From Mobula birostris (taxonomy: Eukaryota): a DNA stretch of 64,000 nt. The notes under the pieces are model-generated. The model had not been told where the DNA came from, made no database searches, and saw only the letters and a list, made by a program, of their open reading frames with translations. Shown piece by piece: positions 4,880-56,770 of the stretch. Each line of letters opens with the position of its first letter. Positions within the stretch are counted from its first letter, which is position 1. Where the stretch lies: assembly GCF_030028105.1 (NCBI RefSeq), contig NC_092376.1, positions 178,660,080-178,724,079 on the forward strand. The letters are read 5' to 3'. The position numbers and the translations under genes are program-made.

Positions 4880-4990
4880 AGCTTTAAGAACTGCATTTAA
4901 CAGTTATTGACAAGGCTCATTATGCTACCGACAGCCAATAGGCATCCACTTTCTGTGGGAGATCCATTGCCCCTCCTCGCTGGTGACGGA
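4880..4990 (+). promoter_or_regulatory. Pcdh promoter block (CSE position degenerate)
   Basis: AGCTTTAAGA 4880, TTATTGAC 4904, CCAAT 4935, GATCCATTGCCCCTCC 4961. Same order and spacing upstream of all four Pcdh ORFs. Confidence 0.75.
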
Positions 4991-5144
4991 AAGGATTTTT
5001 CATTGATATTGCGGACTTATAGCTTCGAGAAACATTATCAGTGTGAATTCTGCATATAGTACACCGGTCAAAGGGTTTAACTATCGTTAGAGCTCCTGAA
5101 ACAATTATACAGATATAAAAGGATAATAATCTGGCGCAGAGACA

Positions 5145-7535
5145 ATGGTGAATTCGCAGAACAACAACGCCATGTTACTGTTGATGCTGAATTTTATTCT
5201 CCTTTTCATACTGAGACAGGGACTGGGTCTGATTCGCTTTTCTATTCCAGAGGAATTGGAATATGGCTCTTCTGTCGGGAATATTGCTGAAAATTTAGGA
5301 CTAATCGCTCGAGAATTATCATTACGAAAATGTCGCCTAGTCTCCGGTGACGGAAGCCGGTATCTAGAGGTAAATTTAGAGACTGGGCTCCTGTTTGTGA
5401 GCGGTCGGATAGACAGAGAGCAGCTTTGTACACAGGGTCCTACTTGTAATATTGCCTTTCAGATAGTTCTAGAAACCCCCCTCGAAATGTACCGCGGGGA
5501 AGTGGAGATTCTTGATATAAATGATAATCCGCCCTCGTTCCAAGAAAACACCATTGTCTTGCAAATGTCTGAATCTGTTGCACCGGGTACCCGCTTCCCA
5601 CTAGAGAGCGCACTTGATCCAGACGTGGGATCAAACACAGTTAAAACGTATACCATCACTCCCAACGAGAACTTTGGTTTGAAGGTGCACATCAGAAAGA
5701 ATACTGTTATAAATGCAGAATTGGTGTTAGAGAAACCTTTGGACCGTGAGAAACAGGCATCTTTTGATCTTGTACTGACGGCCGTTGACGGCGGCAATCC
5801 TCCGAGATCCGGCACAACTCAAATCAAAATCAATTTGTTGGACATCAATGATAATGCGCCTATGTTCGAGAATGATGTGTATACGGCAAGACTGAAAGAA
5901 AACGCACCAACAGGAACCTTAGTGATCAAAATCAAAGCTGTCGATCTGGACCAAGGTAATAATGCCGAGTTAAAATATTCGTTCTCTAATCTTATCCCAG
6001 AGAGAGTGCGTGAATTATTCAGTCTGGACGCTGAAACTGGAGCGATCAAAGTTCGGGAACAGCTGGACTTTGAGAATGAGCAAAGTTATGAACTTGATGT
6101 CCAGGCTGTGGACAATGGCTCACCATCAATTACAGGACATGCCAAAGTGCTGATCGATTTGATTGATGTAAATGATAATGCCCCGGAGATAACAGTGACC
6201 TCCATATCTGGCAAAATCCCCGAAGATGTTGCGCCCGGAACAGTTGTAGCTCTACTGGACGTTACAGATCACGATTCAGGAGCAAACGGACTAATTCGCT
6301 CTGAAATTCCTCTGGGCCTTCCCTTTAAAATTGAGTCATCCCAGAACAGCCATTATAAAGTGACCACCACTCGTCCGTTGGATCGGGAAACCGCACCGAC
6401 CTATAAGATACCTGTCACAGCCTGGGACGCCGGGTCTCCTCCATTATCAACAAATAAAACTATCGAGATATCGGTGTCTGATGTTAATGACAACACACCA
6501 CAATTTTCCCAATCTTCCTACGCCGTCTATGTGATGGAGAACAACTCTCCAGGTGGGTCTATTTTCACACTGACTGCGATTGATTCTGATATGGACCAGA
6601 ACTGCTATATTTCTTATTCCTTTTGGGGGAATTTGCAGGATTCGCTGGTGCTCACTTACTTCAGTATTAACTCGATGAACGGTACCATTTGCGCATTGCG
6701 CTCATTTGACTATGAGAAGGTCAAAAGCTTCCAGTTCCATGTTCAAGCCCGTGACGCCGGAGTGCCCCCGCTGAGCAGCAGCGCTACAGTGAATGTCATC
6801 ATCCTGGATCAAAATGACAACGCTCCGGTAATTGTTTCACCTTCAGCACAGAGTGGGACTGCAGCGGTGGTGATCCTGCCACAGTCAGCGGGTCAGGGAT
6901 ACTTGGTCACCAAAATCATAGCAACTGATGCAGATTCTGGTCAGAACGCTCGGCTCTCTTACCAGATATTTGAAGCAACCGATCTCACTCTCTTCAGTGT
7001 GGGGCGTATTTCAGGCGAAATCCGAACAGCAAGGCGTATTTTGGACTTGGATGATACCTCGCAGAGTATAGTCGTCTTAGTGAGGGATAATGGACAGCCG
7101 AGTCTGTCAGGTACAGCCTCAATCTTTTTGTCAATTTTGGGCAATGTTACCGAGACAATCCCTGAAACTAAGGATTTTCATAGTAATCCTGGTTATGTTT
7201 CGGATATAAATCTTTATTTGCTTGTCACCTTCGGATCAACATCGGTTTCGTTCCTTCTGATCATCGTCTTCTTGGTGGTCTTAAAGTGTAAACAAGATGC
7301 TGGTATTGTTCAAGATGGCGGCTGCCCGATTTGTTGTTCCTGGCCGAGGAACTCGAGGGAAGTATATATGCAGGGAGATGCGCCAAGGGATCCCTTAAAT
7401 TGTACTGGAACTGGTCAGACTGCACCCTTTCCAGAAAGATATCATTACTCGGTATGCTTGTCACCGGAATCATCGAAGAGCGAATTTCTTTTCCTGAAAC
7501 CCTACAATCCTTCCTTTTCTCAAGGTCAACGCTAA
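5145..7535 (+). CDS. Clustered protocadherin, 796 aa (variable-exon type, apparently single-exon)
   Basis: Signal peptide. Six cadherin repeats with PEE, DRE and DxNDNxPxF motifs. EC1 Cys-X5-Cys (CTQGPTC). TM LYLLVTFGSTSVSFLLIIVFLVVL. Tail motif YSVCLSPESSKSEFLFLKP. Start context ACAATGG. Confidence 0.95.
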   Translation: MVNSQNNNAMLLLMLNFILLFILRQGLGLIRFSIPEELEYGSSVGNIAENLGLIARELSLRKCRLVSGDGSRYLEVNLETGLLFVSGRIDREQLCTQGPTCNIAFQIVLETPLEMYRGEVEILDINDNPPSFQENTIVLQMSESVAPGTRFPLESALDPDVGSNTVKTYTITPNENFGLKVHIRKNTVINAELVLEKPLDREKQASFDLVLTAVDGGNPPRSGTTQIKINLLDINDNAPMFENDVYTARLKENAPTGTLVIKIKAVDLDQGNNAELKYSFSNLIPERVRELFSLDAETGAIKVREQLDFENEQSYELDVQAVDNGSPSITGHAKVLIDLIDVNDNAPEITVTSISGKIPEDVAPGTVVALLDVTDHDSGANGLIRSEIPLGLPFKIESSQNSHYKVTTTRPLDRETAPTYKIPVTAWDAGSPPLSTNKTIEISVSDVNDNTPQFSQSSYAVYVMENNSPGGSIFTLTAIDSDMDQNCYISYSFWGNLQDSLVLTYFSINSMNGTICALRSFDYEKVKSFQFHVQARDAGVPPLSSSATVNVIILDQNDNAPVIVSPSAQSGTAAVVILPQSAGQGYLVTKIIATDADSGQNARLSYQIFEATDLTLFSVGRISGEIRTARRILDLDDTSQSIVVLVRDNGQPSLSGTASIFLSILGNVTETIPETKDFHSNPGYVSDINLYLLVTFGSTSVSFLLIIVFLVVLKCKQDAGIVQDGGCPICCSWPRNSREVYMQGDAPRDPLNCTGTGQTAPFPERYHYSVCLSPESSKSEFLFLKPYNPSFSQGQR

Positions 7536-10145
7536 TACACAAAGATGTGGTAAACGCGAGTGTTTTACAAAATTATAATATTTACTTCATTTTGCGGTAA
7601 AATGCCTTTGAAATATCAGTCATGATTTGGTTGTTCACTAGAGCATGCTGTAATAAACACGATGGTGTTATGCAGGGTAGACGATAGTCATCATTAAAAT
7701 CATCTGTTTACTAACCATGGTACCGCAAATTACCTAGCCGGCTGATCCACGCTAACCGATTCCATAACTGATCTTGTCCCTACCACCTGTACCGCTCAGC
7801 GGCGACCCACTTGAATAATTCACTTGCTGAACAGGTCTCCAAAACATTCACGGAATAGATTATCATGACAATACTCACTCCTCGAGTGATTAAGAGGTAA
7901 TTAAAAAAAAAACAACCCATTTTCTTATCCCTGCTCTTTGTTATTCATTGGAACGACTGGCAAATTTGCAGAGACTCTTCTGAATTTTTTTTGTGTCATT
8001 CGAGATTCCCCATGAAACCACAGTATTAGAAATATTAACGTTTAATTCTTGAACTGAACACTAACCGAAAACCTTACGCGAATGCAAAGATACATTGCAA
8101 GGTGCTTCCAGCTTTAATAGGAAGCGTCTTACTTCATGCTCAGTTATATATTTACCCCCAAGGCTATTTATTCTATTATACCGTGTTTTATTCTCCATAA
8201 AACCTGCCCTCCTCCGTATTCTTCATGAGCCTCCAGCAGCATTCGTACTTTTTAACATGTGCTTTATCAAGCTTTCGTTTAGACATATCTGTTATTGGAC
8301 TAAATGCGGTGTCGTGTTCCTCAGACTTTAATTGAATTTATTTTCCAAGAATTACATGTTGATTTATTAATATCTGATGATGGTTAAGATCTCTGATCTT
8401 TGGGCAAGTTATTTCATCATACGGGTTGATAATGAATACATTTTTCTCTTGATCAGACTGTTATATTATCTCAGAAACTTTATCAAACAAGCTCACTGAC
8501 TTCCTTATTCAGCAATATTCTCAAACTTCCTTGAGTTACAGTTTAGCCCGCAACATGGCATCGTTTTGTATAATTTTCTTCTATGCCTCCATGAAGTTTT
8601 CAAATATATTTCCTAATCAAATTTATAGCTTTTGTTCTTTAATTCCTTTCGGCTCGCGGCGCTTGAAGGTTGCCTTCTTTATAAACAGAATATTCTGTTA
8701 GATTAGTTCTTAATGATTTTCTTCTTTGTATCTTTTGTCAATTTCCAACAAATCCCCATTCATATTCTTAATTTTCATGTATTACAATTTTGTACTTACC
8801 GAAACAGTAGCACCATACACATTGTCCTTGTCTACACTTTGTGCTATTTTCAATTAATTCACAATGCTTGGTTATACTTTGCTATGGTTTTGTTATACTT
8901 AGATTACTTACAAATGCAACTTTCAGGATAGTTTACCTTTCATGACATTGGCATTACGATAGCTGATCTGTAATTCACCACTAAAATTAATGCCTGTTTA
9001 GGAAGAAAAGTTATAAATAGTTGTCTGCTCCCACTGTGGTAGGAAACACCTTTGCAATGATCGCATCTAAACGTCATATTTGGTTATATTTAACTGTTTT
9101 ATTTTCAAACTTTGTGGATGCATTCGAATTGGATCAGAAATTTTAACCTTAATTTTCATTAAATCATTGGCTTTAACTCTCCCAGAATTGTTTCACTTAT
9201 TTGTTCCAGAAGCATATTGAGACGTCGGTGTGGACAAAGACTGTACCGGGCTTCAGGTACACAGATGCGTTTAAATGCTAACACAGACAGATAGCGCGAA
9301 GAAGAAGGGAAGCCGTTTGGCACACTTGCCATCAATGGTTAATGCACTGGCTACCACTGTTAGGACGCGATGTCAAGTATAACTGTCTCTGGTATAACTG
9401 TACGATTCTTGTCATATGCTATCTACCTTGCAGATAAACCAAGATAATAGTGACTTAAATTTTTTTAACAAGATTCTGCAATTTTTGTCAAGCTAGGTGA
9501 GCTTACTGTGTGCAACGGTTGGAGGTTGAATATCCTAAATAGATATTTTTGCTTTCGCGTTTAGTTTTTTTTCTCTCTGCGTTCTTTTCCTTTCCGATTG
9601 TTTCTCAGTTTCATTACATTTTATTCCCCCTTGTTATCCTCTGCGGATTTAAATTAAAAACAGCATTGCTGAACAAAAATTCAACAGCAGAGGCTTCGTT
9701 TGTGGAAAGAAATATACCTAACGTTTCAGGTTCTGAGGCTGAAACTTTAACTAGTCTTCTTTCCATATGTGCTACCCGAGCTGCTGAGTTCTTGCAATAT
9801 TTTATTACCTCCTTCAACAATCCGACAGCGTGAATTTTTCATCATGCGGCTAACTTTCTCGATTACGAGCTTAAAATATTTATATCAGTTTTATACATGT
9901 GCCAATAGTTTATGTTTACATGTCAAGGTATCCAAGGAATTTTTCGCAAACAGGTGCTTAATGGTTAATCATGGAATCAAACGATCTCGAATATATGGGC
10001 GCTGACCGTTTAGAATACCAATTATTGATACTATCAAAACACTAAATTACTAATTTTAAAATATTTTCTACAAGAATAATATTAATGCAAATAATTCTGT
10101 CAATCTGTATTATAATTGCAGCACACTAAATTCCCAATGCAGACT

Positions 10146-10255
10146 AGCTTTAAGAACAGCATTCTGCAGTTATTGACAGGGCTCTTACGCCGCCACCAGC
10201 CAATAGTATTCCACTTTCAGTGGGAGATCCATTGCCCCTCCTCGCTGGTGTCAGA
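10146..10255 (+). promoter_or_regulatory. Pcdh promoter block (CSE core CGCC variant)
   Basis: AGCTTTAAGA 10146, TTATTGAC 10170, CCAAT 10200, GATCCATTGCCCCTCC 10226. Confidence 0.75.
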
Positions 10256-10403
10256 AAGGATTTTCCATTGACATTGTGGAACACCAGCTCTAAGGGACAT
10301 TATTTGTATGTAGATACATCAGTCAAAAGGATTTATTACCGATACAGCTGCCGAAACGGTCGCAGAGATATAATAAGGATAACAGACTTTCATTGCAGAG
10401 ACA

Positions 10404-12794
10404 ATGGCGAATTCGCAGAACAACAACGCCTTGATACCGTTGGTGCTGATTTTTATTCTCCTTGTTGTCGCACTGAGACAAGGTCTGGGTCTGATTCGCT
10501 ATTCTATTCCAGAGGAATTGGAATATGGCTCTCCTGTCGGGAATATTGCTGAAAATTTAGGTCTAGGCTTAAGAGAATTATCAGCACGAAAATGTCGTTT
10601 CGTCTCAGCTGACGGAAGCCGGTACTTAGAGGTAAATTTAGAGACTGGTCTCCTGTTTGTGAGCGGTCGGATAGACAGAGAACAGCTTTGTGCACAGAGC
10701 CCTACTTGCAATCTTGCCTTTCAGATAATACTAGAAAACCCTCTCGAAATGTACCGCGGGGAAGTGGAGATTCTCGATATAAATGATAATTCGCCCTCAT
10801 TCCCAGAAAACACCATCGTCTTGCAAATGGCCGAATCTGTTGCACCAGGTACCCGCTTCCCACTAGAGAGCGCACTTGATCCAGACGTGGGATCAAACAC
10901 CGTCAATACGTATATAATCAGTCCCAACGAGAACTTTGGTTTGAAGATGCACGTCAGAAAGAATACTGTTACAAATGCAGATTTGCTGTTACAGAAATCA
11001 TTGGACCGTGAACGAGAAGCAGTTATCCAACTTGTATTGACTGCTGTTGACGGCGGTAAACCTCCGAGGTCAGGGACAACTCAAATTACCATCCGTGTAC
11101 TAGACAATAACGATAATGCACCTGTGTTCGATAATGATGTATATACGGTGAAACTGGAAGAAAACTTACCTTTGGGAACATTGGTGACGAAAATCAGTGC
11201 TGTTGATCTGGACCAAGGTACTAACGGTGAGCTGAAATACTCTTTCGTTAATCTCCCAGACAGAGTGCGCGAATTATTCAGCCTGGACCCTGAAACTGGT
11301 GAGTTGAAAGTTCAGGAACGGCTAGACTTTGAGGATGAGAAAAGTTACGAACTTGATGTTCAAGCCGTGGATAATGGTTCACCAGCACTAACAGGACATT
11401 CCAAAGTTCTGATCGATTTGATTGATATGAATGATAATCCCCCGGAGATAACACTGATATCCCTGTCTGGCAAAGTCCGCGAAGATGCCCTGCCCGGGAC
11501 AGTGGTTGCGCTGTTGGACGTAACGGATCGTGATTCAGGAACAAACGGACAAGTTCACTGTGAGATTCCACTGGGACTTCCGTTTAAAATTCAGTCCTCC
11601 CAGAGGGACCATTGTAAAGTGGCCACCTCTCGTCTATTGGATCGGGAAACCAACCCGATGTATACGATACCTGTCACGGCCTGGGACTCCGGGCTTCCTC
11701 CGCTATCAACAAATCAAACAATCCAGTTACCTGTGTCTGATGTAAATGACAATATACCACAATTTTCCCAATCTTCCTATGCCGTCTATGTGATGGAGAA
11801 TAATGCTCCAGGTATTTCCATTTTCACAGTTAATGCGTTCGATCCGGATCTGGACCAGAACTCCTATATTTCTTATTCCTTCAAGGAAATTTCGCAGGAT
11901 TCACTGATACCCACACACTTCAGCATTGCCTCAATGAACGGCACAATTTACGCATTACGCTCCTTTGACTACGAGAAGGTCAAAAGCATTCGGATCTATG
12001 TTCAAGCCCGTGACGCTGGAGTGCCTCCGCTTAGCAGCAGCGCTACGGTGAATGTGATCATCCTGGATCAAAATGACAACGCTCCTATAATTGTTTCACC
12101 GTCAGCACAGAGTAGATCGGGAGGCGTGGAGGTCCTGCCCCAGTCAGCGGGTCAGGGGTACTTGGTCACCAAAATCATAGCAACTGATGCAGATTCTGGT
12201 CAGAATGCTCGGCTCTCTTACCAGATTGTTCAGGCAACCGATGTCACTCTCTTCAGTGTGGGGCGGAATTCAGGGGATATCAGAACAACGAGAACTATTT
12301 CAGAGCTGGATGATGCATCGCAGAGTATTGTCATCTTAGTGAGGGACAACGGACAGCCGAGCATGTCCACTACAACCACAATCTTCTTGTCGATTTCGGG
12401 CAATCTTACTGAGAATGTGTCTGAAAAGAGGGATTTTCATAGTAATCCTCGTTATGTTTCGGACATGAATCTTTATTTACTTGTGACCTTCGGATCAACA
12501 TCGGTTTTGTTTCTTCTGATCATCGTTTTCTTGGTTTTATTAAAGTGTAAGCAAGATGGTGGCATTGTCCGAGATTTCGGTTGCCCAATATGTTGTCCCA
12601 GACCGCGAAATTCGAAGGAAGTCTTTACTCGGTGCGATGCACCAAGAGATTCGTCAAATTGCACTGGAACTGGTCAGAGGGCATCCTTCTCTGAGAGCTA
12701 TCATTACTCGGTGTGTTTGACACCCGAATCATCCAAGAGCGAATTTCTTTTCCTGAAACCCTACAACCTAAACTTCACTCAAGGTCAGCGTTGA
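10404..12794 (+). CDS. Clustered protocadherin, 796 aa, close paralogue of 5145-7535
   Basis: Same architecture (SP, 6 EC, TM, YSVCLTPESSKSEFLFLKP tail). CAQSPTC in EC1. ACAATGG start context. Confidence 0.95.
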   Translation: MANSQNNNALIPLVLIFILLVVALRQGLGLIRYSIPEELEYGSPVGNIAENLGLGLRELSARKCRFVSADGSRYLEVNLETGLLFVSGRIDREQLCAQSPTCNLAFQIILENPLEMYRGEVEILDINDNSPSFPENTIVLQMAESVAPGTRFPLESALDPDVGSNTVNTYIISPNENFGLKMHVRKNTVTNADLLLQKSLDREREAVIQLVLTAVDGGKPPRSGTTQITIRVLDNNDNAPVFDNDVYTVKLEENLPLGTLVTKISAVDLDQGTNGELKYSFVNLPDRVRELFSLDPETGELKVQERLDFEDEKSYELDVQAVDNGSPALTGHSKVLIDLIDMNDNPPEITLISLSGKVREDALPGTVVALLDVTDRDSGTNGQVHCEIPLGLPFKIQSSQRDHCKVATSRLLDRETNPMYTIPVTAWDSGLPPLSTNQTIQLPVSDVNDNIPQFSQSSYAVYVMENNAPGISIFTVNAFDPDLDQNSYISYSFKEISQDSLIPTHFSIASMNGTIYALRSFDYEKVKSIRIYVQARDAGVPPLSSSATVNVIILDQNDNAPIIVSPSAQSRSGGVEVLPQSAGQGYLVTKIIATDADSGQNARLSYQIVQATDVTLFSVGRNSGDIRTTRTISELDDASQSIVILVRDNGQPSMSTTTTIFLSISGNLTENVSEKRDFHSNPRYVSDMNLYLLVTFGSTSVLFLLIIVFLVLLKCKQDGGIVRDFGCPICCPRPRNSKEVFTRCDAPRDSSNCTGTGQRASFSESYHYSVCLTPESSKSEFLFLKPYNLNFTQGQR

Positions 12795-15640: not shown

Positions 15641-15774
15641 TCATTAGCTGACTGGCTTGTTAATCAACCCAAATAATGGTGACTTAAAATAACTATGAAA
15701 ATTTTTTGGAATTTTTGTCAATATAGGCGAGCTCACAATGTGCACGTGTTGGATCTAGAAGGCCATAAGTTCAG

Positions 15775-16305: not shown

Positions 16306-16309
16306 CATA

Positions 16310-24582: not shown

Positions 24583-25873
24583 AATACTGTACTAGATGCA
24601 GAGTGACAGTAAGATAAATCATTGGACTGTGGAGAATAGGCATCTTTCCAACTTGTATCGACGGCTGTTGACGGTGACAAGCCTTCAAGAACAAAAAATG
24701 CACCCGTGTTCGAAAAAGAGGCTGAAAGGAAACGCATTTTTGGGAACATTAGTGACCAACGCACCAAGGTATTAAATGCACTATTTGTTAATCTTGTTCC
24801 AGGGAGAGTGCGTAAGTTATTGGCCTGGTTCCTGAAACTGTGAGAACGAAATGCAGGAATAACTGGATTTTGAAGCAGAGGAATGCCACGAACTTGATAT
24901 TTAGACCGTGGAAAATGGTTCGCCAGCACTTACAGGGCATTCCAAAGTGTGAATGGATTTGATTGATGTAAAAGATAATGGTCCTGCGATAACGGTGTGC
25001 TCTCTATGTGGCAAAGTCCCCAAGCCTCTCCCGGAACAGTGATAGCTAAAATGTTCGTTACGAATCGCTATCCCGGAGCAAACGGGGAAGTTCCGAGCAC
25101 CATTTCATTGGGTCTTTCCTTTTAAATTTAGTCCTCCCTGAACAGCCATTATCAAGTGATCACCAGTCGCTTGTTGGATCGGGAAACCACTCCAATCACA
25201 GCGTGTGTGTTTGGGTCTCCACAATTAACATGTAAAATCATCCATATATTGTTGTCCGATAGCAATACAACACATCACGAATTTCCCAATCTTTCTACGA
25301 CTTCCATGTGATGAGAATCACGCTACGGGTGCATGTATTTTCGCACAGACTGCGTTTGATCCGGACCTGGGCCACATCTTTTTTTTTGTCTTCAGGGGGA
25401 ATGTGCGGGATACACCGGTGCCCATCTACATTATGATTAACTTGATAGAAGACAGCATTTGCGCACTGCGCTCCTTTGAATATCAGGAAATCAAAACCTT
25501 CCAAATCCTTATTCACGCTCGTTACGGCGATGTGCACCAGCAGAGCAGCAGCGCTACAGTGAATGCGAGCATCCTGAATCAAACTGATAACGTGCCGGAA
25601 ATAGTTTTACCTTCAGCGCAGTGTAGATCGGGAGCCGTGGAGATCCTTCCCCAGTCAGTAGGTCAGGCGTACTTGGTCACTAAAATCATGGTGACTGTTG
25701 TAAGTTCTGGTCAGAACGCTCGGCTCTCGTACCAGATGGTTCAAACAACCGATCCATAGGGTTTAATTTAGGCGAAATCAGAACAATGGGAAGAACTTTG
25801 GAGCTGGATGATTGCTACCACGCAGAGTACAATGGTCCTAGTGGGCAACGTCACCGAGAATGTTACCGAGAAA
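24583..25873 (+). pseudogene. Clustered protocadherin pseudogene (late EC2 to EC6; promoter, EC1, TM and tail deleted)
   Basis: Colinear decayed similarity to 10960-12430. Residual frame ICALRSFEYQEIKTFQ...SSSATVNASILNQTDNVPEIV...YLVTKIM...SGQNARLSYQ. Multiple indels and stops. Ends at GNVTENVTEK. Confidence 0.9.
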
Positions 25874-25875
25874 GT

Positions 25876-35905: not shown

Positions 35906-38826
35906 GTTGTAAAAGAGCGCCTGAAGGCTTTGTGTGTCAATGCAAGGAGCATTCGTAATAAGGTGGATGAATTGAAAGTGCAGATTGTTATTAATGATTA
36001 TGATATAGTTGGGATCACAGAGACATGGCTCCAGGGTGACCAGGGATGGGAGCTCAACGTTCAGGAATATTCAATATTCAGGAGGGATAGACATGAAGGA
36101 AGGGGAGGTGGGGTGGCGTTGCTGGTTAAAGAAGAGATTAACGCAATAGAAAGGAAGGACATAAGCCGGGAAGATGTGGAATCGATATGGGTAGAGCTGC
36201 GTAACACTAAGGGGCAGAAGACGCTGGTGGGAGTTGTGTACAGGCCACCTAACAGTAGTAGTGAGGTCCGAGATGGTATTAAATGAGAAATTAGAAATGT
36301 GTGCAATAAAGGAACAGCAGTTATAATGGGTGACTTCAATCTACATGTAGATTGGGTGAACCGAATTGGTAAAGGTGCTGAGGAAGAGGATTTCTTGGAA
36401 TGTATGCGGGATGTTTTTTTGAACCAACATGTCGAGGAACCAACTAGAGAGCAGGCTATTCTGGACTGGGTTTTGAGCAATGAGGAAGGGTTAATTAGCA
36501 ATCTTGTCGTGAGAGGCCCCTTGGGTAAGAGTGACCATAATATGGTGGAATTCTTCATTAAGATGGAGAGTGACATAGTTAATTCAGAAACAAAGGTTCT
36601 GAACTTAAAGAGGGGTAACTTTGAAGGTATGAGACGTGAATTAGCTAAGATAGACTGGCAAATGACACTTAAAGGATTGACGGTGGATATGCAACGGCAA
36701 GCATTTAAAGGTTGCATGGATGAACTACAACAATTGTTCATCCCAGTTTGGCAAAAGAATAAATCAAGGAAGGTAGTGCACCCGTGGCTGACAAGAGAAA
36801 TTAGGGATAGTATCAATTCCAAAGAAGAAGCATACAAATTAGCCAGAGAAAGTGGCTCACCTGAGGACTGGGAGAAATTCAGAGTTCAGCAGAGGAGGAC
36901 AAAGGCCTTAATTAGGAAGGGGAAAAAGATTATGAGAGAAAGCTGGCAGGAAACATAAAAACGGACTGTAAAAGCTTTCAGAGATATGTAAAAAGGAAAA
37001 GACTGGTAAAGACAAATGTAGGTCCCCTGCAGACAGAAACAGGTGAATTGATTATGGGGAGCAAGGACATGGCAGACCAATTGAATAATTACTTTGGCTC
37101 TGTCTTCACTAAGGAGGACATAAATAATCTTCCAGAAATAGTAGGGGGCAGAGGGTCCAGTGAGATGGAGGAACTGAGCGAAATACATGTTAGTAGGGAA
37201 GTGGTGTTAGGTAAATTGAAGGGATTGAAGGCAGATAAATCCCCAGGGCCAGATGGTCTGCATCCCAGGGTGCTTAAGGAGGTAGCCCAAGAAATAGTGG
37301 ATGCATTAGTGATAATTTTTCAAAACTCGTTAGATTCTGGACTAGTTCCTGAGGATTGGAGGGTGGCTAATGTAACTCCACTTTTTAAAAAAGGAGGGAG
37401 AGAGAAACCGGGGAATTATAGACCGGTTAGCCTAACGTCAGTGGTGGGGAAACTACTGGAGTCAGTTATCAAGGATGTGATAACAGCACATTTGGAAAGC
37501 AGTGAAATGATCGGACAAAGTCAGCATGGATTTGTGAAAGGAAAATCATGTCTGACGAATCTCATAGAATTTTTTGAGGATGTAACTAGTAGAGTGGATA
37601 GGGGAGAACCAGTGGATGTGGTATATTTGGATTTTCAGAAGGCTTTTGACAAGGTCCCACACAGGAGATTAGTGTGCAAACTTAAAGCACACGGTATTGG
37701 GGGTAAGGTATTGGTGTGGGTGGAGAGTTGGTTAGCAGACAGGAAGCAAAGAGTGGGAATAAATGGGACCTTTTCAGAATGGCAGACGGTGACTAGTGGG
37801 GTACCGCAAGGCTCAGTGCTGTGACCCCAGTTGTTTACAATATATATTAATGACTTGGATGAGGGAATTAAATGCAGCATCTCCAAGTTTGCGGATGACA
37901 CGAAGCTGGGTGGCAGTGTTAGCTGTGAGGAGGATGCTAAGAGGATGCAGGGTGACTTGGATAGGTTGGGTGAGTGGGCAAATTCATGGCAGATGCAATT
38001 TAATGTGGATAAATGTGAGGTTATCCACTTTGGTGGCAAAAATAGGAAAACAGATTATTATCTGAATGGTGGCCGATTAGGAAAAGGGGAGGTGCAACGA
38101 GACCTGGGTGTCATTATACACCAGTCATTGAAAGTGGGCATGCAGGTACAGCAGGCGGTGAAAAAGGCGAATGGTATGCTGGCATTTATAGCGAGAGGAT
38201 TCGAGTACAGGAGCAGAGAGGTACTACTGCAGTTGTACAAGGCCTTGGTGAGACCACACCTGGAGTATTGTGTGCAGTTTTGGTCCCCTAATCTGAGGAA
38301 AGACATCCTTGCCATAGAGGGAGTACAAAGAAGGTTCAGCAGATTGATTCCTGGGATGGCAGGACTTTCATATGAAGAAAGACTGGATGAACTGGGCTTG
38401 TACTCGTTGGAATTTAGAAGATTGAGGGGGGATCTGATTGAAACGTATAAGATCCTAAAGGGATTGGACAGGCTAGATGCAGGAAGATTGTTCCTGATGT
38501 TGGGGAAGTCCAGAACGAGGGGCCACAGTTTGAGGATAGAGGGGAAGCCTTTTAGGACTGAGATTAGGAAAAACTTCTTCACACAGAGAGTGGTGAATCT
38601 GTGGAATTCTCTGCCACGGGAAACAGTTGAGGCCAGTTCATTGGCTATATTTAAGAGGGAGTTAGATATGGCCCTTGTGGCTACGGGGGTCAGGGGGTAT
38701 GGAGGGAATGCTGGGGCAGGGTTCTGAGTTGGATGATCAGCCATGATCATAATAAATGGCGGTGCAGGTTCGAGGGGCCGAATGGCCTACTCCTGCACCT
38801 ATTTTCTATGTTTCTATGTTTCTATG
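35906..38826 (+). mobile_element. Young CR1 LINE with essentially complete ORF2 (EN+RT), 2 stops and 1 frameshift
   Basis: [52 protein letters not shown]. 3' stem GGTGCAGG...CCTGCACC (38761-38799) and (TTTCTATG)3 tail. Confidence 0.95.
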
Positions 38827-39048
38827 AGACGGAAGCAATCCCTGAGTCAATCGTTCAATATAAGGATGTATGCACGTAGTACTTTTAATATATGCTGTTG
38901 AAAGTTGTAGGAACAGTTTTATAGCTTCGGTGGAAACTTTGGAACAGAATAAAAAAGGCGGAATAAGCTGCGAAACTTCTTGTGTCATTGGGGCAGAAAT
39001 TACAGTTGTACACCCATAAACAGTAGACTGCCTTTCCTGGGGCCGCCC

Positions 39049-39150
39049 AGCTTTAAGATTTTCTGTTGTTATTATTGACAAGAGATCTTTGTGTCGCTGT
39101 CCACCAATCAGGATCTCAAGTGCAGCTAGAGATCCATTGCTCCACCCCCA
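39049..39150 (+). promoter_or_regulatory. Pcdh promoter with CSE-like element (CGCT core)
   Basis: AGCTTTAAGA 39049, TTATTGAC 39072, GTGTCGCTGTCCACCAAT 39091-39108, GATCCATTGC 39131. Confidence 0.85.
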
Positions 39151-39344
39151 CCGGTGAATGAAAGCAGAATCAGACGGAAACGACCCGGTATTTTACTTCA
39201 GCCTGGACGACCGTTTATTGAAACAGCCAGGACCAGTCTGTCATCTCGGCAAGACAAGGTTTGGTTAGATATTTTCGTCAGCAGTCTCTCGCAAAGCAAC
39301 CGAAGTAAATTCGTGCTTCTGGAAAAGAAAGCGGCCTCACAACA

Positions 39345-41759
39345 ATGGCGAATGTACAGGGTAAGAAAGCCTTACAGTCCCTGGGATTGCCTTTTAGTGT
39401 TATTATTTGTGCATTAAGTATGGTTTTCGGACAGATTCGCTATTCAATTCCCGAAGAAATAGAGCGGGGATCAATTATCGGTAACATTGCTGAAGATTTA
39501 GGATTAAAGGCTGGAACATTGCTCGCTCGTAGAGGACGGCTTGTCTCCGGTCGCATTAAACCATATGCGGAATTAAATTTGGAAAGTGGGGTTTTGTTTG
39601 TCAATGAGAGAACGGACAGAGAAAAACTCTGTGGATCGATGTCTACCTGTATTCTTCCTTTCCAAATTGTGATTGAAAATCCCCCAGAAATGTACCGCGG
39701 TGAATTGGAGAATGTCGATATAAATGATAATACGCCCATTTTCCCGCAACGCACCGTTGCCTTGCAGATTGCTGAAATTATTGCACCCGGCGCTCGTTTT
39801 CCACTGGAGAGCGCTCTCGATCCGGACGTGGGGACAAATGCAGTCACTGCATACCTGATCAGCCCCAATGAACACTTCAGTCTGAAAGTGGAGAACGCGG
39901 AAGAAGGCATTAAAATTGCAGAGCTGTTGTTGGAGAAACCCCTGGACCGCGAGAGGCAGGCATCTTTTCAGCTGGTGCTGACGGCCGTTGACGGAGGAAA
40001 GCCTCGGAAATCTGGGACAACTCAGGTTGCAATTACTGTGCTGGACAGCAACGATAACGCGCCGGTTTTCGATCGGAAGGTGTACAAAGCCAGCCTGCCA
40101 GAAAACACGTCCAGGGGATCCCCAGTGGTTACGGTGCACGCTTCGGATGCAGATGACGGCCTAAACGCAGAGCTAACTTACTCTTTCAGCAATCGTGCCT
40201 CAAAGGAAGTGCAGGAATTGTTCAGTTTGGATCCCCGGACGGGAGAAATTAGAGTCTTAGGAGATCTGGACTTCGAAGAGGCAAACAGCTATACAGTGGA
40301 TGTTCAGGCTGTGGACAGAGGTTCACCAGCAATTGCAGGGCATTCTAAAGTCCTAATCAGGATAACTGATGTCAATGATAACGACCCGGAAATAGAAGTA
40401 AACCTGGTGACTACAAAGGTCACAGAGACTGCGGCGCGCGGGACAGTAATCGCGATGATCAATGTACATGATCGAGATTCTGGAGTGAACGGAGAAGTAC
40501 ACTGCAAGATTCCACCACATATTCCGTTTAAGTTGCAGGCATCATCGAGCGGTCATTATAAACTAAGTACCAGTGACTCCTTAGATCGGGAAAGTACCGC
40601 ACTCTATAATATTGCTTTTTTCGCCCGGGATTCGGGATCTCCTCCTCGATCGACGAACAAAACTATCCAGATATGGGTTTCTGACGTCAATGACAACGCC
40701 CCAAGGTTTTCCCGGTTCTCTTATACAGTTTATGTGACGGAGAACAACGCTCTGGGTGCACTTATTTCCGTAGCATCTGCTGTCGATCCTGATTTGGACC
40801 AGAACTCTTACGTTTCTTACTCCTTTGTAGAGAGCCTTATCCAGGACTTACCAGTATCCAGGTATCTCAACATTAATCCTGTGAATGGTACCATTTCTGC
40901 GCTGCGCTCTTTTGATTATGAGAATATCAAAACGTTCCAGGTGTACGTTCAAGCCCGGGACGCTGGTGTACCCCCACTGAGCAGCACTGCTACGATGAAT
41001 GTAATCATCCTGGATCAAAATGACAACGCTCCGGTAATTGTTTCACCTTCAGCAGAGAGTGGATTGGCAGCTGTGGAGGTCGTGCCGCAGTCAGTGGGTC
41101 AGGGGTACTTGGTCACCAAGATCATGGCAACTGACACCGATTCTGGTCAGAACGCGCGGCTGTCCTATCAGGTGCAGAGATCCACTGATCCCGGTTTATT
41201 CAATATTGGGCAAAACTCGGGCGAAATTAGAACAGCTCGTAATATTTTGGAGTCTGATGCCACGACACAAACTCTAGTAATTTTGGTGAAGGATAATGGA
41301 CAGCCAAGCCTATCCAGCACGATTACAATCCTCCTTACAGTTACGGACAGCAACACTGAAAGAACCATTGAAAACAGCAATTTTGTAGCGAAGCCCGAAG
41401 ATTTCTCTGAACTGAATCTTTACTTAATTGTCACTTTCGGCTGCACTTCCTTTCTCTTTCTTGTCACCATCATTCTCCTGATTGGCATTAAGTGTAACAT
41501 GAGCAGAAATGTCAGCCAAGACTACAATTCACCCAGTTGTTGCTACAGCCTTGAACGTTCTAACGACAACTTTCACCTAAGACCTCAAATGAAAGAATCT
41601 TTAAATGACAATAGAACAAACTCGATGGTTTACGTACCGGAAAACCATCATTATTCTGTTTGTTTGTCTCCAGAGTCAGCGAAAAGCGATTTCCTATTTC
41701 TGAAGCCGTGCAATCCGCCAATATCTCAGGCCCGATGTCAATCTATAAATATCGGATAA
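39345..41759 (+). CDS. Clustered protocadherin, 804 aa
   Basis: SP. QIRYSIPEE mature N-terminus. CGSMSTC. 6 EC repeats. TM LYLIVTFGCTSFLFLVTIILLIGI. Tail YSVCLSPESAKSDFLFLKP. Confidence 0.93.
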   Translation: MANVQGKKALQSLGLPFSVIICALSMVFGQIRYSIPEEIERGSIIGNIAEDLGLKAGTLLARRGRLVSGRIKPYAELNLESGVLFVNERTDREKLCGSMSTCILPFQIVIENPPEMYRGELENVDINDNTPIFPQRTVALQIAEIIAPGARFPLESALDPDVGTNAVTAYLISPNEHFSLKVENAEEGIKIAELLLEKPLDRERQASFQLVLTAVDGGKPRKSGTTQVAITVLDSNDNAPVFDRKVYKASLPENTSRGSPVVTVHASDADDGLNAELTYSFSNRASKEVQELFSLDPRTGEIRVLGDLDFEEANSYTVDVQAVDRGSPAIAGHSKVLIRITDVNDNDPEIEVNLVTTKVTETAARGTVIAMINVHDRDSGVNGEVHCKIPPHIPFKLQASSSGHYKLSTSDSLDRESTALYNIAFFARDSGSPPRSTNKTIQIWVSDVNDNAPRFSRFSYTVYVTENNALGALISVASAVDPDLDQNSYVSYSFVESLIQDLPVSRYLNINPVNGTISALRSFDYENIKTFQVYVQARDAGVPPLSSTATMNVIILDQNDNAPVIVSPSAESGLAAVEVVPQSVGQGYLVTKIMATDTDSGQNARLSYQVQRSTDPGLFNIGQNSGEIRTARNILESDATTQTLVILVKDNGQPSLSSTITILLTVTDSNTERTIENSNFVAKPEDFSELNLYLIVTFGCTSFLFLVTIILLIGIKCNMSRNVSQDYNSPSCCYSLERSNDNFHLRPQMKESLNDNRTNSMVYVPENHHYSVCLSPESAKSDFLFLKPCNPPISQARCQSINIG

Positions 41760-52940: not shown

Positions 52941-55786
52941 AGATGTAATAGGGTGGAAAAATGCGCTACTGGTCTTCGTAAGCCACCGTGGGTTAATACT
53001 GCGCTGCGAAACGCTCATTTTCATTCACATACAGCTGGATCGGCTTGCTGTAATAGGGCAATCCTCAGTCCATTGTACTGTATCAGATGCATCCTACGTT
53101 ACTACGACTCGGAGGACAGCATCATAGATGCGGTATTCAGGTACTCAATAACGACATTAATTCGTCATTGCCAGGAAAGGTATCATCTGTCTCTTGGCAG
53201 AAGTTCTGGGAGACTGAGCAATGAGAGTCACACGCTCCGACCCTAATCGGCGGGTTCCTTTGTGCAATATATATCCCAAATATTTCGGTGCAGGCCGGCA
53301 GAGTTGGAAGTTCGACAAGGAGGTTGTATGTCCTCTGGCAGCAAAATCATTAATCAACGTCACACATTCTTCTGTACAATCAGTCGGTGTCTGTGAGGCC
53401 AGAAACAAATCAGCTGCATATTGTAAAATCATGCTGCCTCCAGGCAGTAGTAAATTTGCTAGATCATCACGAATAACGGCTGCGTGGAGAACTGGACATA
53501 ATGTGTAATCCAGCAGTAAAACTGTTCACGTGTATTGCTGTCCATTACAGTCTATGAGAAGGCAACCAGATACTGACTGTCCTGATGCAGTGGTGTAGAA
53601 ACAATAAGAAGAGTACAAATCAATCACCGTACACCAGTATCACATTCGAGTCCGGAACGTTCGGTGAAATAGGCTGGACTTCTGAGTTATAGCCCGCAGA
53701 TCCTGGATAAGCCGCCTCCCATTCGGCCTCCCGGTTTGGGAATGTATAATGTCAGCGTATTGCAAGGGCTTTGAGTTAATCGCAGAACATTTTGTCGCAA
53801 TGACGTCTCTATGAAAAGTTTAATACCCCGATGGTTTCTGGAGTTAGGCGATTTTGTTTGATGAACAGTAGTCCGGCACTTTGTTAAGAGTCACCTGAAG
53901 GGGAACTACTGACTTTCACTAATCCTACATGACTAGTATCTGGGGGGCTGCCTATGATCCCAAATCAATAAGCGTAAAAGGAAGTTTCACTTCGATTGAG
54001 GCATGGGGCAGTGATTGTTGGTCCTTCAGGAAGAGCTCCTCCTGTTTCCCTTTGAACTGAACCTCAGCTGCTATTCCCTCAGGGCCAAGATATCCCTACC
54101 CGATAAGAATATTAGCCCCCCTTACCTTCATGTTAATATGCTTGGTTACTATAATCGGCATCGGGATCTGGATTGCTGAAGGCCACAGCACAATGTGGTG
54201 TTTACAAGTTCCGATCAAATCATTCAATAATTCTCCCACAGCCAATCTCCCCAGGCTTTCCCCCAACTGTGCCAACTGTAGAGAGATGCATTATAGTGCG
54301 GAGCTCGGGTAATCTATTCTCAGGGGTTTCAAGATATAATCCTTCGGAGGTACAGTGAATTACCCATTTAGTGTTTAGAGTGAGTGGCGTCCAAGCAAAT
54401 TAAGAGGTGCCTTCTGTGCTGTAACAAGAGTTTCATCAATCCTAAATTTCCCTGCTTGTTTTTAACCGACTTGGACAGGGGTTCTATCATAGGAACTCTG
54501 GTCATCTCTGCATTCTTAATACCTTTGCTGTCGTTTGGTAATGCCACTTCAGAACGCTCAATTTAAAATAATGTGCTACCTCTGATCGGGGACAATTTAT
54601 AAACATTTGCTTTGGGAGTGTTTTTTTTTTTCTCTGCAGGGGTATCCCTGCACTAGATCACTGGAAAGATACCACTTTACTTCGCGAAACATGTTGCGAA
54701 CCTCAGATGGGATCCAGCGTTTTTGTATCAGGACATTCCCTACTGTTAGCGAGGAGCCTGGAAGAGAGTCTGAGCTAATTGTCGGCCTCTCCTCGGCTGT
54801 TGCTGTTGTTGCTGCTGCTGTTGGCGGTCACACTGCCAGGACACTGTTACAGCCATTTCTATTATTTCCATATCATCCGGAAGCTCCAAAAACGGAGGAA
54901 GTAATGTTATTGGAGGATATAGTCTGGGTCTGAGACGGTCGGAGCCGAGGGTCCTGATGCGAGCACCTCGGCACTCTGCGTAATTTGGTTTAACACTCAG
55001 AGGCTGGTGCCGATTTGCCACCTCTTCCCATTCGTTAAAGCACCACATTATACACAGTATTTTAAATTCCAATTAGGATCTCTGCACCCTGATTTTGTTT
55101 CATTTCTCAAATGCTGAAACTTTTTAGAACAAAGGATCCACCATAGAGCCAATCCACATCACTCCACCCATAGAGATCACGAGAAAAATGTTTCAGAGTA
55201 TCTGCTATCCCCCGTTTCCATCCAAATCTTATCATCGGGGGACCCCGTGAAACCAGCGGGTCACTTAGGGGTTGTTTGGTCTTCAAACTTTCGACCTTCT
55301 TTCGTGTATGCTTATTCATTGGCACCTTTACCAGAGGATCAGAGGGCCGCGATTGAAGAGATGGTTCTCCTCAGGACTCCTCAGGTCGTTGAAACGTACC
55401 GTTATTATTATCCATTTCCCTCCTCTAGCTACCGTTGAAACTATTTTTAACAACTATGCAAGATCTAATATTCTTTACAGGTAATATGTACAATCCCTTC
55501 TCCCCATTGGTTGACAAAGCACCCATCATTTGCCAAGGTCTCCTTAAGTTTAGTCAAGATTTACTCTCCCGATGCTCTCAGGCTCTCTTCTACCAATCCC
55601 ATTCTTGTTCCTTTCCTCGAACTCATGGGTCACCGGCCGGTATGTGACAGCTCCGGCACCCGCGTCCAGTATCGATCCATGTTCCTCGAGCGAGTCCCTA
55701 GGATGGACTCACCCCAGTCGAATTTTGACCTCTAGCTTTTAAGTAAGTCTCACGGATAGGTTCGGTCGCAATCGCGTATCATAAGG

Positions 55787-55804
55787 ATCCTATCCTCGTC
55801 GCCA
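55787..55804 (-). other. Retroviral primer-binding site, tRNA-Ser(GCU)
   Basis: Plus strand ATCCTATCCTCGTCGCCA matches the vertebrate tRNA-Ser(GCU) 3' end ATCCCATCCTCGTCGCCA at 17/18 (tRNA recalled from memory). Lies immediately inside the 5' LTR. Confidence 0.8.
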
Positions 55805-56663
55805 AATTACGGTCGAAGAATCTCGGCTGTTTTACCGTATTTTAATGTAACATAATTTCACCAGGTTATCAAAGACACGGACACAGACCTCGCTATACAG
55901 TTAACCCTATAATGCGTAATTACGGGGAACCGTTGTCTTATGATTCCCACATTATCAGGCTACATCTTAACTTTCTGTAGTAGAATTTGGACAATAACGA
56001 ACTGCTAAACATACTTAGTCACCGAATGCAAGAAATACTCGTTAGGTATCAGCCAATACAGAAATGTTTCCACGCGGTATATAATATTAGAATTACAGGT
56101 CCACGTTCAGTTCCTCTATCAGTCAAACAGTCTCGGACAAAGGTTAGTCATTATTGGCATCATCTATTGCTAGCTATTGTAAGCTAGCACAAACAAGACA
56201 GCGTCTGTGTCTTAGCCTGACACACTCATGATACAAATCAATGGCAATTCTGAACTAGTAAAGCTTGACATCAAAATTTAATACACAATTTAATTTTCTT
56301 TCACATTTAAACATGGATTGAAGCTGCCCCAATGCAATGACACTTCAACTGTAAAAGCTCACCCGCAACGTTTTTTCGAGCAGATCATAACATAGAACAA
56401 ATGCACAAATGTAACTGTCAGGGTCGGATACGAGGGAAAAGAAACAATAAATCTAATTGGATCATAAAAATTCTCATGGAACCAACCTGCTCTCTGTTGC
56501 GTACTGACTGAACTTCTAGGTCGTGTTAAAATTATGGCCAAAATGCCATGTAATAGTTGTTGTTATATTTTACGATGATAAACGTTGAAAATAAAATGAA
56601 TTGAGCAACTTCATCAACAACTACATTTTATGGTGTACACCATTAAATATAGGAGAACGGTAC

Positions 56664-56770
56664 AGCTTTAAGAGCATCAGTTGTAATTGACGAAAAGAAC
56701 TGGTTGTGTCGCTGTCTACCAATGAGAAACACAATTTCACAGTTGGATCCATTGCCCCTCCTACGCCCAG
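56664..56770 (+). promoter_or_regulatory. Pcdh promoter with CSE-like element (CGCT core)
   Basis: AGCTTTAAGA 56664, TAATTGAC 56684, GTGTCGCTGTCTACCAAT 56706-56723, GATCCATTGCCCCTCC 56746. Confidence 0.85.

What the first reader, a model, noticed from the sequence alone, without database searches (positions are those of the whole stretch)
4880..56770. Five-block, fixed-spacing promoter grammar shared by all four Pcdh genes, extending beyond the known CSE
Seen: AGCTTTAAGA starts at 4880, 10146, 39049 and 56664. CCAAT follows after 55, 54, 55 and 55 bp. GATCCATTGC(C/T)CC follows CCAAT after 26, 26, 27 and 27 bp. A T(T/A)ATTGAC block and the CSE-position 20-mer lie between the first block and CCAAT. 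Outside these blocks, genes 3 and 4 show no evident upstream similarity to genes 1 and 2. Established: mammalian clustered Pcdh promoters carry a CGCT-core CSE bound by CTCF for stochastic promoter choice. Inference: AGCTTTAAGA and GATCCATTGCCCC are additional sites held at near-integral helical spacing (~5 turns from block 1 to CCAAT) and are better conserved than the CSE itself. They may define an undescribed or ancestral promoter-choice module.
Basis: partly seen in the sequence, partly recalled or inferred. Interest (0 to 1): 0.8.

Follow-up and report, generated by a model that had tools for sequence, protein, structure and literature searches.

The report
Conserved manta protocadherin promoter module
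Four protocadherin genes of a manta ray carry the same 117-base promoter module, six short blocks held at fixed distances although everything around them has diverged; it is an extended version of the known protocadherin promoter, and the proteins that bind it are unknown.

Summary
All four intact protocadherin (Pcdh) ORFs in the window are preceded, 258-296 bp before the ATG, by the same ordered blocks.

The three promoter lineages (g1/g2, g3, g4) fall in three protein clades that each hold both sharks and rays. Their fourfold sites are 41-48% identical. Blocks are 89-96% identical and spacers 45-63%. This points to purifying selection on a composite proximal promoter, not chance and not recent gene conversion.

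- The CGCT core is present in g3 and g4 but absent at that position in g1 and g2.
- No module matches the CTCF consensus better than background.
- The spacings are fixed but not near-integral helical (5.2 and 2.5 turns).
- A TALE/NF-Y DECA-CCAAT reading fails on spacing.

Transcription start sites, bound factors and any role in promoter choice are untested. I rate it a new variant of the clustered-Pcdh CSE promoter, of moderate interest. Other first readers noted extended Pcdh promoter blocks elsewhere in this genome; those notes are unchecked.

The parts
4880..4995 (+). Promoter module of g1. Block 1 4880-4889; block 2 4904-4911; CSE-position spacer 4912-4934 (no CGCT); CCAAT 4935-4939; block 5 4961-4976; block 6 4989-4995.
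   Evidence: nhmmer E 2.6e-33
5145..7535 (+). g1, clustered-protocadherin ORF (796 aa)
   Evidence: Cadherin_2, Cadherin with 5 matched stretches, Cadherin_C_2
10146..10260 (+). Promoter module of g2. Block 1 10146-10155; block 2 10170-10177; CSE-position spacer without CGCT; CCAAT 10200-10204; block 5 10226-10241; block 6 10254-10260.
   Evidence: nhmmer E 3.2e-32
10404..12794 (+). g2, clustered-protocadherin ORF (796 aa), 78% identical to g1
39049..39166 (+). Promoter module of g3. Block 1 39049-39058; block 2 39072-39079; CGCT core 39095-39098; CCAAT 39104-39108; block 5 39131-39146 (GATCCATTGCTCCACC); block 6 39160-39166.
   Evidence: nhmmer E 8.6e-32
39345..41759 (+). g3, clustered-protocadherin ORF (804 aa)
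56664..56780 (+). Promoter module of g4. Block 1 56664-56673; block 2 56684-56691 (TAATTGAC, shifted 3-4 bp); CGCT core 56710-56713; CCAAT 56719-56723; block 5 56746-56761; block 6 56774-56780 (within AATAAAAGGA).
   Evidence: nhmmer E 1.2e-31
56959..59346 (+). g4, clustered-protocadherin ORF (795 aa from the ATG)
24583..25873 (+). Broken Pcdh relic (matches about aa 186-675 in pieces). It has no 5' end and no promoter module, so it serves as an internal contrast.
   Evidence: tblastn E down to 8.6e-61; nhmmer finds nothing upstream
37048..38826 (+). Retroelement (reverse-transcriptase ORFs, 8-bp tandem tail at 38799-38826). It ends 222 bp 5' of g3 block 1 and so bounds the upstream extent of that promoter.

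Best explanation
The four modules are the proximal promoters of four clustered-protocadherin genes of a ray. The genome is Mobula birostris by the protein hits.

Each promoter is a ~117-bp composite of six short protein-binding blocks in one orientation. One block is a CCAAT box, most likely bound by NF-Y. In g3 and g4 a CGCT-core, CSE-like element sits 9 bp before it. Transcription most likely starts shortly after the last block.

The blocks and their mutual distances have been kept by purifying selection in paralogue lineages that separated before sharks and rays diverged. This implies that the bound factors must sit in a fixed geometry, as a cooperative, enhanceosome-like assembly. Blocks 1 and 5 work without the CGCT core, which g1 and g2 have lost at that position.

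Shown here: the anatomy, the excess over chance, the age of the paralogue lineages, the contrast between blocks and spacers, and the absence of a CTCF consensus.

Inferred: protein binding, NF-Y at CCAAT, the TSS position and cooperativity. A role in stochastic promoter choice is only an analogy with mammals.
For: 1. Position and orientation. All four intact Pcdh ORFs have the module 258-296 bp 5' of the ATG on the coding strand, and it occurs nowhere else in 64 kb.

2. Divergence of the carriers. Amino-acid identity between lineages is 54-58% and fourfold-site identity 41-48%. g1/g2, g3 and g4 lie in three clades (SH-like support 99) that each contain sharks and batoids.

3. Selection pattern. 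Blocks are 43/46, 44/46 and 41/46 identical between lineages, against 38/73, 34/75 and 47/75 for spacers.

4. Spacing. Block 1 to block 5 is 81/80/82/82 bp, while block 5 to ATG is 184/178/214/213 bp. Spacer 1 plus spacer 2 sum to 37/36/37/37 bp even though block 2 is shifted in g4, so the indels are compensated.

5. Promoter rather than transcribed leader. ATG triplets number 34 per 1200 bp 5' of block 1, but 4 per 650 bp between the module and the start codon. The expectation is 18.4 (Poisson P 6e-5), and only 0.28% of composition shuffles give 4 or fewer. The module also shows no conserved RNA structure.

6. Internal contrast. The broken Pcdh relic has no module.

7. Precedent. Mammalian Pcdh promoters have a CSE about 200 bp before the ATG (PMC7811963, PMC4978886). 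They also have an adjacent upstream element whose distance from the CSE cannot be changed by 5, 10 or 15 bp (PMC3333863, section 14).
Against: - Only four promoters were seen, representing three independent lineages, in one window of one genome.
- No orthologous promoter DNA from another species could be fetched.
- There are no TSS, expression or binding data. The runs found were contigs that look like DNA.
- Block 2 is not at a fixed offset.
- The factor assignments for blocks 1, 2, 5 and 6 are open.
- A ~200-nt coding tract is 85-97% identical across all lineages. Some sequence exchange or DNA-level constraint therefore exists in this cluster, which leaves a small door open for conversion.
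Confidence: 0.75

Rival explanations
1. The whole module is an extended CTCF platform. As at mammalian CSEs, CTCF binds here, and the outer blocks are contacts of its peripheral zinc fingers or of cofactors. Promoter choice would then work by CTCF/cohesin looping as in mammals.
For: Mammalian CSEs are CTCF sites whose CGCT box is contacted by zinc finger 3 (PMC7811963). g3 and g4 keep a CGCT core at the same offset. g1, g2 and g3 carry a forward CTCF-like 15-mer with 2 mismatches at ATG+453/456, about 670-705 bp after the CSE position. This recalls the exonic CTCF site of mammalian Pcdh-alpha, about 700 bp after the CSE (PMC7811963).
Against: The best matches to CCASYAGRKGGCRSY inside the modules have 4, 4, 5 and 6 mismatches, and 41.5% of 160-bp windows of this sequence reach 4 or fewer. 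With CGCT aligned to motif positions 12-15, the window's best-hit list for g4 shows 6 mismatches of 15. g1 and g2 have no CGCT at that position. The exonic match encodes the conserved P-L-E-S-A of EC2, is absent in g4, and the window-wide hit count is at chance, 4 against 4.07. A consensus scan is crude, and no weight matrix or binding data were available.
Confidence: 0.1
2. The blocks are leftovers of common descent or of gene conversion between promoters, and the individual blocks have no function.
For: The genes are tandem paralogues. g1 and g2 are a recent duplicate pair alignable over the whole 400 bp upstream. One coding tract is nearly identical in all lineages.
Against: Fourfold sites are near saturation between lineages, and the flanks are at 27-31% ungapped identity. 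Perfect 10-16-mers alternating with diverged spacers, plus compensated indels, are not what a conversion tract leaves. The broken relic lost the module.
Confidence: 0.05
3. The module is transcribed and acts at the RNA level, as a 5' leader, structure or splice signal, with the real promoter further upstream.
For: Block 1 is preceded by AG in all four genes, and by a pyrimidine-rich run in g3, which resembles a splice acceptor. No TSS data exist.
Against: The consensus fold is -1.05 kcal/mol with a positive covariation term. ATGs lie inside the module in g1, g3 and g4, but are depleted only after it. In g3 a retroelement ends 222 bp 5' of block 1, leaving little room for another promoter. A CCAAT box in sense orientation is a typical promoter element (established knowledge).
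Confidence: 0.05
4. Block 2 plus CCAAT form a DECA-CCAAT composite read by PBX/PREP (TALE), NF-Y and Sp2.
For: T[TA]ATTGAC resembles the TALE decamer. That consensus is recalled and came from no call. A CCAAT box follows, and then a C-rich Sp/KLF-like stretch inside block 5.
Against: The composite works at an 11-bp spacer, tolerating 10-12 (bioRxiv 10.64898/2026.02.16.706105, passages read). Here the spacer after a 10-nt site is 21/20/22/25 bp and varies (my arithmetic). Only g2 has the TGACAG half-site.
Confidence: 0.03

Closest known systems
Mammalian clustered-Pcdh promoter with the conserved sequence element (CSE, CGCT box). Wu et al. 2001 as described in PMC7811963 and PMC4978886.
   Same: A short conserved element lies at about the same distance (~200-250 bp) before the start codon of each tandem Pcdh unit. 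A CGCT core is present in g3 and g4. The literature says the CGCT box is surrounded by further conserved cluster-specific sequence.
   Different: Here no CTCF consensus accompanies the CGCT core. Two of the four genes lack the core. The best-kept parts are two outer blocks, 46 bp before and 36 bp after the core, together with a CCAAT box.
SSE-CSE pair of mammalian Pcdh promoters (Golan-Mashiach et al., PMC3333863)
   Same: A second element upstream of the CSE is needed together with it, and the distance between the two is critical (5, 10 and 15 bp linkers abolish activity).
   Different: The mammalian SSE is gene-specific and abuts the CSE. The manta upstream blocks are shared by anciently diverged paralogues and lie 15-36 bp away.
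CGCT element of elephant-shark Pcdh promoters (Yu et al. 2008, as cited in PMC2926608)
   Same: It is a cartilaginous-fish Pcdh cluster with a CGCT element.
   Different: I could not read that paper, so I do not know whether flanking blocks were reported there.
13-bp non-CSE motif of Xenopus tropicalis pcdh-gamma2 15-36 (PMC4978886)
   Same: It is a precedent for Pcdh promoters that lack the CSE/CGCT box yet keep another conserved motif about 200 bp before the ATG.
   Different: It is a single 13-bp motif in one frog subcluster. Its sequence is not printed in the text I read, so it was not compared.
DECA-CCAAT composite element (TALE/NF-Y/Sp2; bioRxiv 10.64898/2026.02.16.706105)
   Same: A homeodomain-like site lies upstream of a CCAAT box under a stereo-specific spacing constraint.
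   Different: The required 11-bp spacer is not met: the manta spacer is 20-25 bp and varies.

Membership tests
Clustered-Pcdh CSE promoter | The element sits at a similar distance (~200 bp) upstream of the start codon of each tandem Pcdh unit. | tested here: met
   The CSE position or CGCT core lies about 210-250 bp before the ATG in 4 of 4 intact genes. The module occurs nowhere else.
Clustered-Pcdh CSE promoter | A conserved CGCT box is present. | tested here: inconclusive
   CGCT lies at offset +46 in g3 and g4. It is absent there in g1 and g2, which have a CGCT only after block 5, at +98/+97.
Clustered-Pcdh CSE promoter | The CSE is a CTCF-binding site (forward CTCF motif ending in CGCT). 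| tested here: not met
   The best consensus matches in the modules have 4, 4, 5 and 6 mismatches of 15, no better than 41.5% of background windows. This was a consensus scan only; binding is not testable here.
NF-Y CCAAT-box promoter | A CCAAT pentamer in a conserved position and orientation. | tested here: met
   CCAAT lies at +55/54/55/55 in all four, on the sense strand.
NF-Y CCAAT-box promoter | The box lies about 60-100 bp upstream of the TSS (recalled rule). | not testable with these tools
   There are no TSS data. uATG depletion begins after offset about +118, which is compatible with the rule.
SSE-CSE module (PMC3333863) | The upstream element is gene-specific, less conserved among paralogues than among orthologues. 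| tested here: not met
   Blocks 1 and 2 are 10/10 and 7-8/8 identical among paralogue lineages. Orthologues could not be compared.
DECA-CCAAT composite | An 11-bp (10-12) spacer between the decamer and CCAAT. | tested here: not met
   The spacers are 21/20/22/25 bp (offsets; rule).
Pcdh-alpha-type exonic CTCF site (eCBS) | A forward CTCF site about 700 bp downstream of the CSE inside the variable exon. | tested here: inconclusive
   A 2-mismatch match lies at 5598, 10860 and 39801 (+), 672-706 bp after the CSE position. It encodes PLESA, is absent in g4, and the window-wide count is at chance.

The most novel reading that the evidence does not exclude
Elasmobranch clustered protocadherins use an ancestral promoter module that does not depend on a CTCF motif. 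Two unidentified factors, binding AGCTTTAAGA and GATCCATTGCCCCTCC, are locked at fixed distances either side of an NF-Y site. The CGCT/CSE element is an optional insert. On this reading the CTCF-based choice mechanism of mammals would be a later addition to an older multi-factor promoter.
Probability: 0.2. Interest if true: 0.7.

Novelty: new variant of a known kind. Interest (0 to 1): 0.5.

Why it matters
Work on how a neuron picks one Pcdh promoter out of dozens has been done almost entirely in mammals, where the CSE is a CTCF site. If cartilaginous fish keep a fixed-geometry promoter in which the CGCT core can be lost and no CTCF consensus is present, two consequences follow. The conserved outer blocks become candidate sites for the factors that made up the original promoter. 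The question of when CTCF was recruited to Pcdh promoters becomes testable by comparing clusters and by CTCF and ATAC profiling in skate or catshark brain. If the blocks prove confined to a few manta paralogues, the finding is just an ordinary subfamily promoter signature.

Tried and rejected
Cross-species promoters.

Metagenome scans. The three-block pattern found nothing. A CCAAT + block 5 pattern found three stretches, L001-L003. On reading they are GC-rich bacterial coding DNA. On the opposite strand the string reads as a ribosome-binding site plus a start codon, so these are chance matches and I dropped them.

Expression and TSS. The look-up of sequencing runs returned four runs kept as contigs, none on record as RNA. 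Read laying showed that X1 also covers intergenic DNA at about 95% likeness, so it is probably DNA of a relative or of paralogues. No start sites could be read. One X1 contig covers 4800-5001 with 4 differences in 202, against 10/184, 19/367 (plus 6 left out) and 11/234 in three intergenic pieces. That is compatible with constraint, but it is a single observation and the differing positions were not listed.

CTCF at the module: rejected by the consensus scan.

NRSE (motif from PMC2926608): 2 hits with 3 mismatches against 1.88 expected, so none.

DECA-CCAAT composite: rejected on spacing.

Conserved RNA structure: none.

Helical phasing: the arithmetic does not give integral turns.

Tree. The IQ-TREE run did not finish in 300 s. 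I used FastTree instead, so supports are SH-like only and the root is midpoint. The tree used 76 of the 120 listed hits plus the 4 window proteins. I dropped all non-chondrichthyan rows, the window's own P0001, and rows outside 700-960 aa (P0003, P0004, P0095).

Literature. Ten full-text searches found no paper that links a CCAAT box or these blocks to Pcdh promoters. Wu 2001, Noonan 2004a/b, Wu 2005, Yu 2008 and Kehayova 2011 are not held, and supplements are closed. Supplementary Figure S1 of PMC3333863 and the figures of Yu 2008 may bear on novelty.

What I read of each paper:
- PMC4978886, PMC7811963, PMC2926608 and 10.64898/2026.02.16.706105: passages.
- 10.64898/2026.02.16.706105: also the outline with abstract.
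- PMC3333863: outline, abstract and sections 5, 13, 14 and 18.
- PMC1852091: a term search with no hits.
- The two October 2026 CTCF preprints: only the search listing with the start of the abstract. One of them says the CTCF motif is similar across taxa.

Recalled, from no call: the CTCF consensus, the TALE decamer, the NF-Y flank and position rules, the CR1-like tail, and the age of the shark-ray split.


Full report
WHAT IS THERE

The window holds four intact ORFs of about 800 aa on the + strand: g1 5145-7535, g2 10404-12794, g3 39345-41759 and g4 56959-59346. All four have the clustered-protocadherin domain set: Cadherin_2, Cadherin with five matched stretches, and Cadherin_C_2.

The nearest database proteins are ray and shark 'protocadherin gamma-C5-like' and 'protocadherin-10-like' models. 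A 100% match lies on a 190,342,219-base contig, the same length as the contig of the hits named Mobula birostris. Earlier follow-up notes of this scan also call the genome giant manta.

A fifth Pcdh is present only as a broken relic at about 24583-25873.

THE OBSERVATION

- AGCTTTAAGA occurs exactly four times (4880, 10146, 39049, 56664), and GATCCATTGCYCC exactly four times (4961, 10226, 39131, 56746). Each copy is on the + strand in front of one ORF.
- Offsets from the first base of block 1:
  - T[TA]ATTGAC at 24/24/23/20
  - CCAAT at 55/54/55/55
  - block 5 at 81/80/82/82
  - a sixth block, [AG]AAAG[GC]A, at 109/108/111/110
- Block 5 really runs for 16 nt, GATCCATTGC[CT]CC[AT]CC.
- The start codon lies 265/258/296/295 bp after block 1.

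CHANCE

- The longest word shared by the 400-bp upstream regions of g1, g3 and g4 is 11 nt. None of 5000 Markov surrogates exceeded 9.
- A profile of the 120-bp module finds the four copies at E 1e-31 to 3e-33 and nothing else below E = 2.4.
- g1 and g2 are a young duplicate pair, alignable over the whole 400 bp. Together they count as one lineage.

AGE AND SELECTION

Between the three lineages:
- Proteins are 54-58% identical.
- Fourfold-degenerate sites are 41-48% identical, close to saturation.
- Coding DNA is 65% identical.

In a FastTree of the four proteins with 76 chondrichthyan hits, g1/g2, g3 and g4 fall in three clades with SH-like support 99. Each clade holds both sharks and batoids. 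Whatever the root, the three lineages must have separated before the shark-ray split. From memory, that split is some 250-300 million years old.

Against that background:
- The blocks are 43/46, 44/46 and 41/46 identical, and the spacers 38/73, 34/75 and 47/75.
- The 120 bp 5' of block 1 are 27-31% identical without gaps.

Spacing is held too:
- Block 1 to block 5 differs by at most 2 bp, whereas block 5 to ATG ranges from 178 to 214 bp.
- In g4 block 2 sits 3-4 bp early, yet the two spacers around it still sum to 37 bp, as in the others (36-37). The indels have been compensated.
- Conversion would leave contiguous identical tracts. Alternating perfect blocks and diverged spacers point to purifying selection on separate sites and on their distances.
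- The relic gene has no module.

PROMOTER OR LEADER?

No RNA evidence could be had. The four runs offered are contigs, none on record as RNA, and the best one also covers intergenic DNA. Three indirect lines favour a promoter:
- ATG triplets are as frequent as expected 5' of block 1 (34 in 1200 bp) but depleted between the module and the start codon (4 in 650 bp). The expectation is 18.4 (P 6e-5), and 0.28% of composition shuffles give as few. ATGs do occur inside the module in g1, g3 and g4. This fits a 5'UTR that begins near the 3' end of the module.
- The module has no conserved RNA fold.
- In g3 a retroelement, with reverse-transcriptase ORFs and an 8-bp tandem tail at 38799-38826, ends 222 bp before block 1. 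The working promoter is therefore compact.

THE CSE AND CTCF

- g3 and g4 share TTGTGTCGCTGTC[CT]ACCAAT, with CGCT at offset 46.
- g1 and g2 have unrelated sequence there, though still with a CpG, and have a CGCT only after block 5. This agrees with a sibling first-reader note (s1-894498).
- In mammals the CSE is a forward CTCF site, and zinc finger 3 reads the CGCT box (PMC7811963).
- Here the modules match CCASYAGRKGGCRSY no better than background. The best matches have 4, 4, 5 and 6 mismatches, and 41.5% of 160-bp windows reach 4 or fewer.
- The only matches with 2 mismatches near the genes lie inside the exons, at ATG+453/456 in g1, g2 and g3 on the forward strand, 672-706 bp after the CSE position. 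That is intriguingly like the mammalian alpha exonic site. But they encode the conserved PLESA of EC2, g4 lacks the match, and the window-wide count is at chance.
- No NRSE was found.

WHICH FACTORS?

- CCAAT in sense orientation, with flanks close to the NF-Y preference as I recall it, makes NF-Y the natural candidate.
- Block 2 looks like a TALE (PBX/PREP) decamer. However, the described DECA-CCAAT composite needs an 11-bp spacer (10-12), and the manta spacers are 20-25 bp and variable. That reading is rejected.
- Block 5 ends in a C-rich Sp/KLF/MAZ-like stretch. Block 1 contains a near-palindrome, CTT-T-AAG. I could not assign either of them.
- The 'near-integral helical spacing' is not borne out: 55 bp is 5.2 turns and 26-27 bp is 2.5 turns.

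COMPARISON WITH WHAT IS KNOWN

- The position before the ATG, the CGCT core (in two genes) and the idea of flanking conserved cluster-specific sequence are all known for Pcdh promoters (PMC4978886, PMC7811963).
- A CGCT element was reported for elephant shark (PMC2926608, citing Yu 2008).
- A distance-critical partner element upstream of the CSE is known in mammals, but there it is gene-specific (PMC3333863).
- Frog gamma2 genes that lack a CSE carry another 13-bp motif (PMC4978886).
- Three things appear different here: the outer blocks are shared by anciently split paralogues, they survive loss of the CGCT core, and no CTCF consensus is present.
- I found no description of these blocks in ten full-text searches. 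The primary papers with promoter alignments are not held and supplements are closed, so prior description cannot be excluded.
- Other first readers noted extended Pcdh promoter blocks at other places of this genome (s1-896583, s1-896585, s1-894355). I could not read those windows.

VERDICT

The feature is best filed as a new variant of the clustered-Pcdh CSE promoter, of moderate interest.

Noticed in passing
window 5598-5612, 10860-10874, 39801-39815 (+): A forward CTCF-consensus match with 2 mismatches lies at the same codons (P-L-E-S-A of EC2, ATG+453/456) in g1, g2 and g3, about 670-705 bp after the CSE position, like the mammalian Pcdh-alpha exonic CTCF site. g4 has FRLNSA and no match. 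Coding constraint may explain it.
   Followed up: partly
window 24583-25873 (+): A broken fifth protocadherin, with tblastn pieces matching about aa 186-675. It has no 5' part and no promoter module upstream.
   Followed up: partly
window 6753-6950 (g1) and the aligned parts of g3 and g4: A coding tract of about 200 nt is 85-97% identical at the DNA level among all three lineages, against 65% for the coding DNA overall. Contigs of runs X1-X3 pile up at 6770-6966. It could be gene conversion or a DNA-level element. A sibling note (s1-894499) flags it.
   Followed up: partly
window 37048-38826 (+): A retroelement with two reverse-transcriptase ORFs and a (CTATGTTT)x3.6 tail ends 222 bp before g3's block 1.
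   Followed up: partly
window 7416-7535, 12675-12794, 41640-41759, 59227-59346: All four ORFs stop 1-7 codons after a conserved SQ[AG]Q, and no GTRAGT-type donor lies in the last 150 nt. Shark and ray models end in the same way. The genes may be self-contained, like mammalian Pcdh-beta, rather than spliced to constant exons.
   Followed up: partly
window 39007-39020 and 56630-56643; 4853-4866 and 10119-10132: A weaker 'block 0' lies 5' of block 1 at a variable distance. It reads TGTACACC in g3 and g4 and CACAC..AAA in g1 and g2.
   Followed up: no
window 16001-24000 and 30001-34000: Long stretches with strongly negative GC skew (-0.21 to -0.38). The cause was not examined.
   Followed up: no
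window 52062-53246 (+): A 394-aa ORF in a GC-richer stretch has only a sub-threshold C2H2 zinc-finger hit.
   Followed up: no
L001 10590-10629, L002 4648-4687, L003 561-600: The CCAAT + block 5 pattern occurs by chance in bacterial metagenome contigs. On the opposite strand the block 5 string reads as a Shine-Dalgarno sequence plus ATG.
   Followed up: yes
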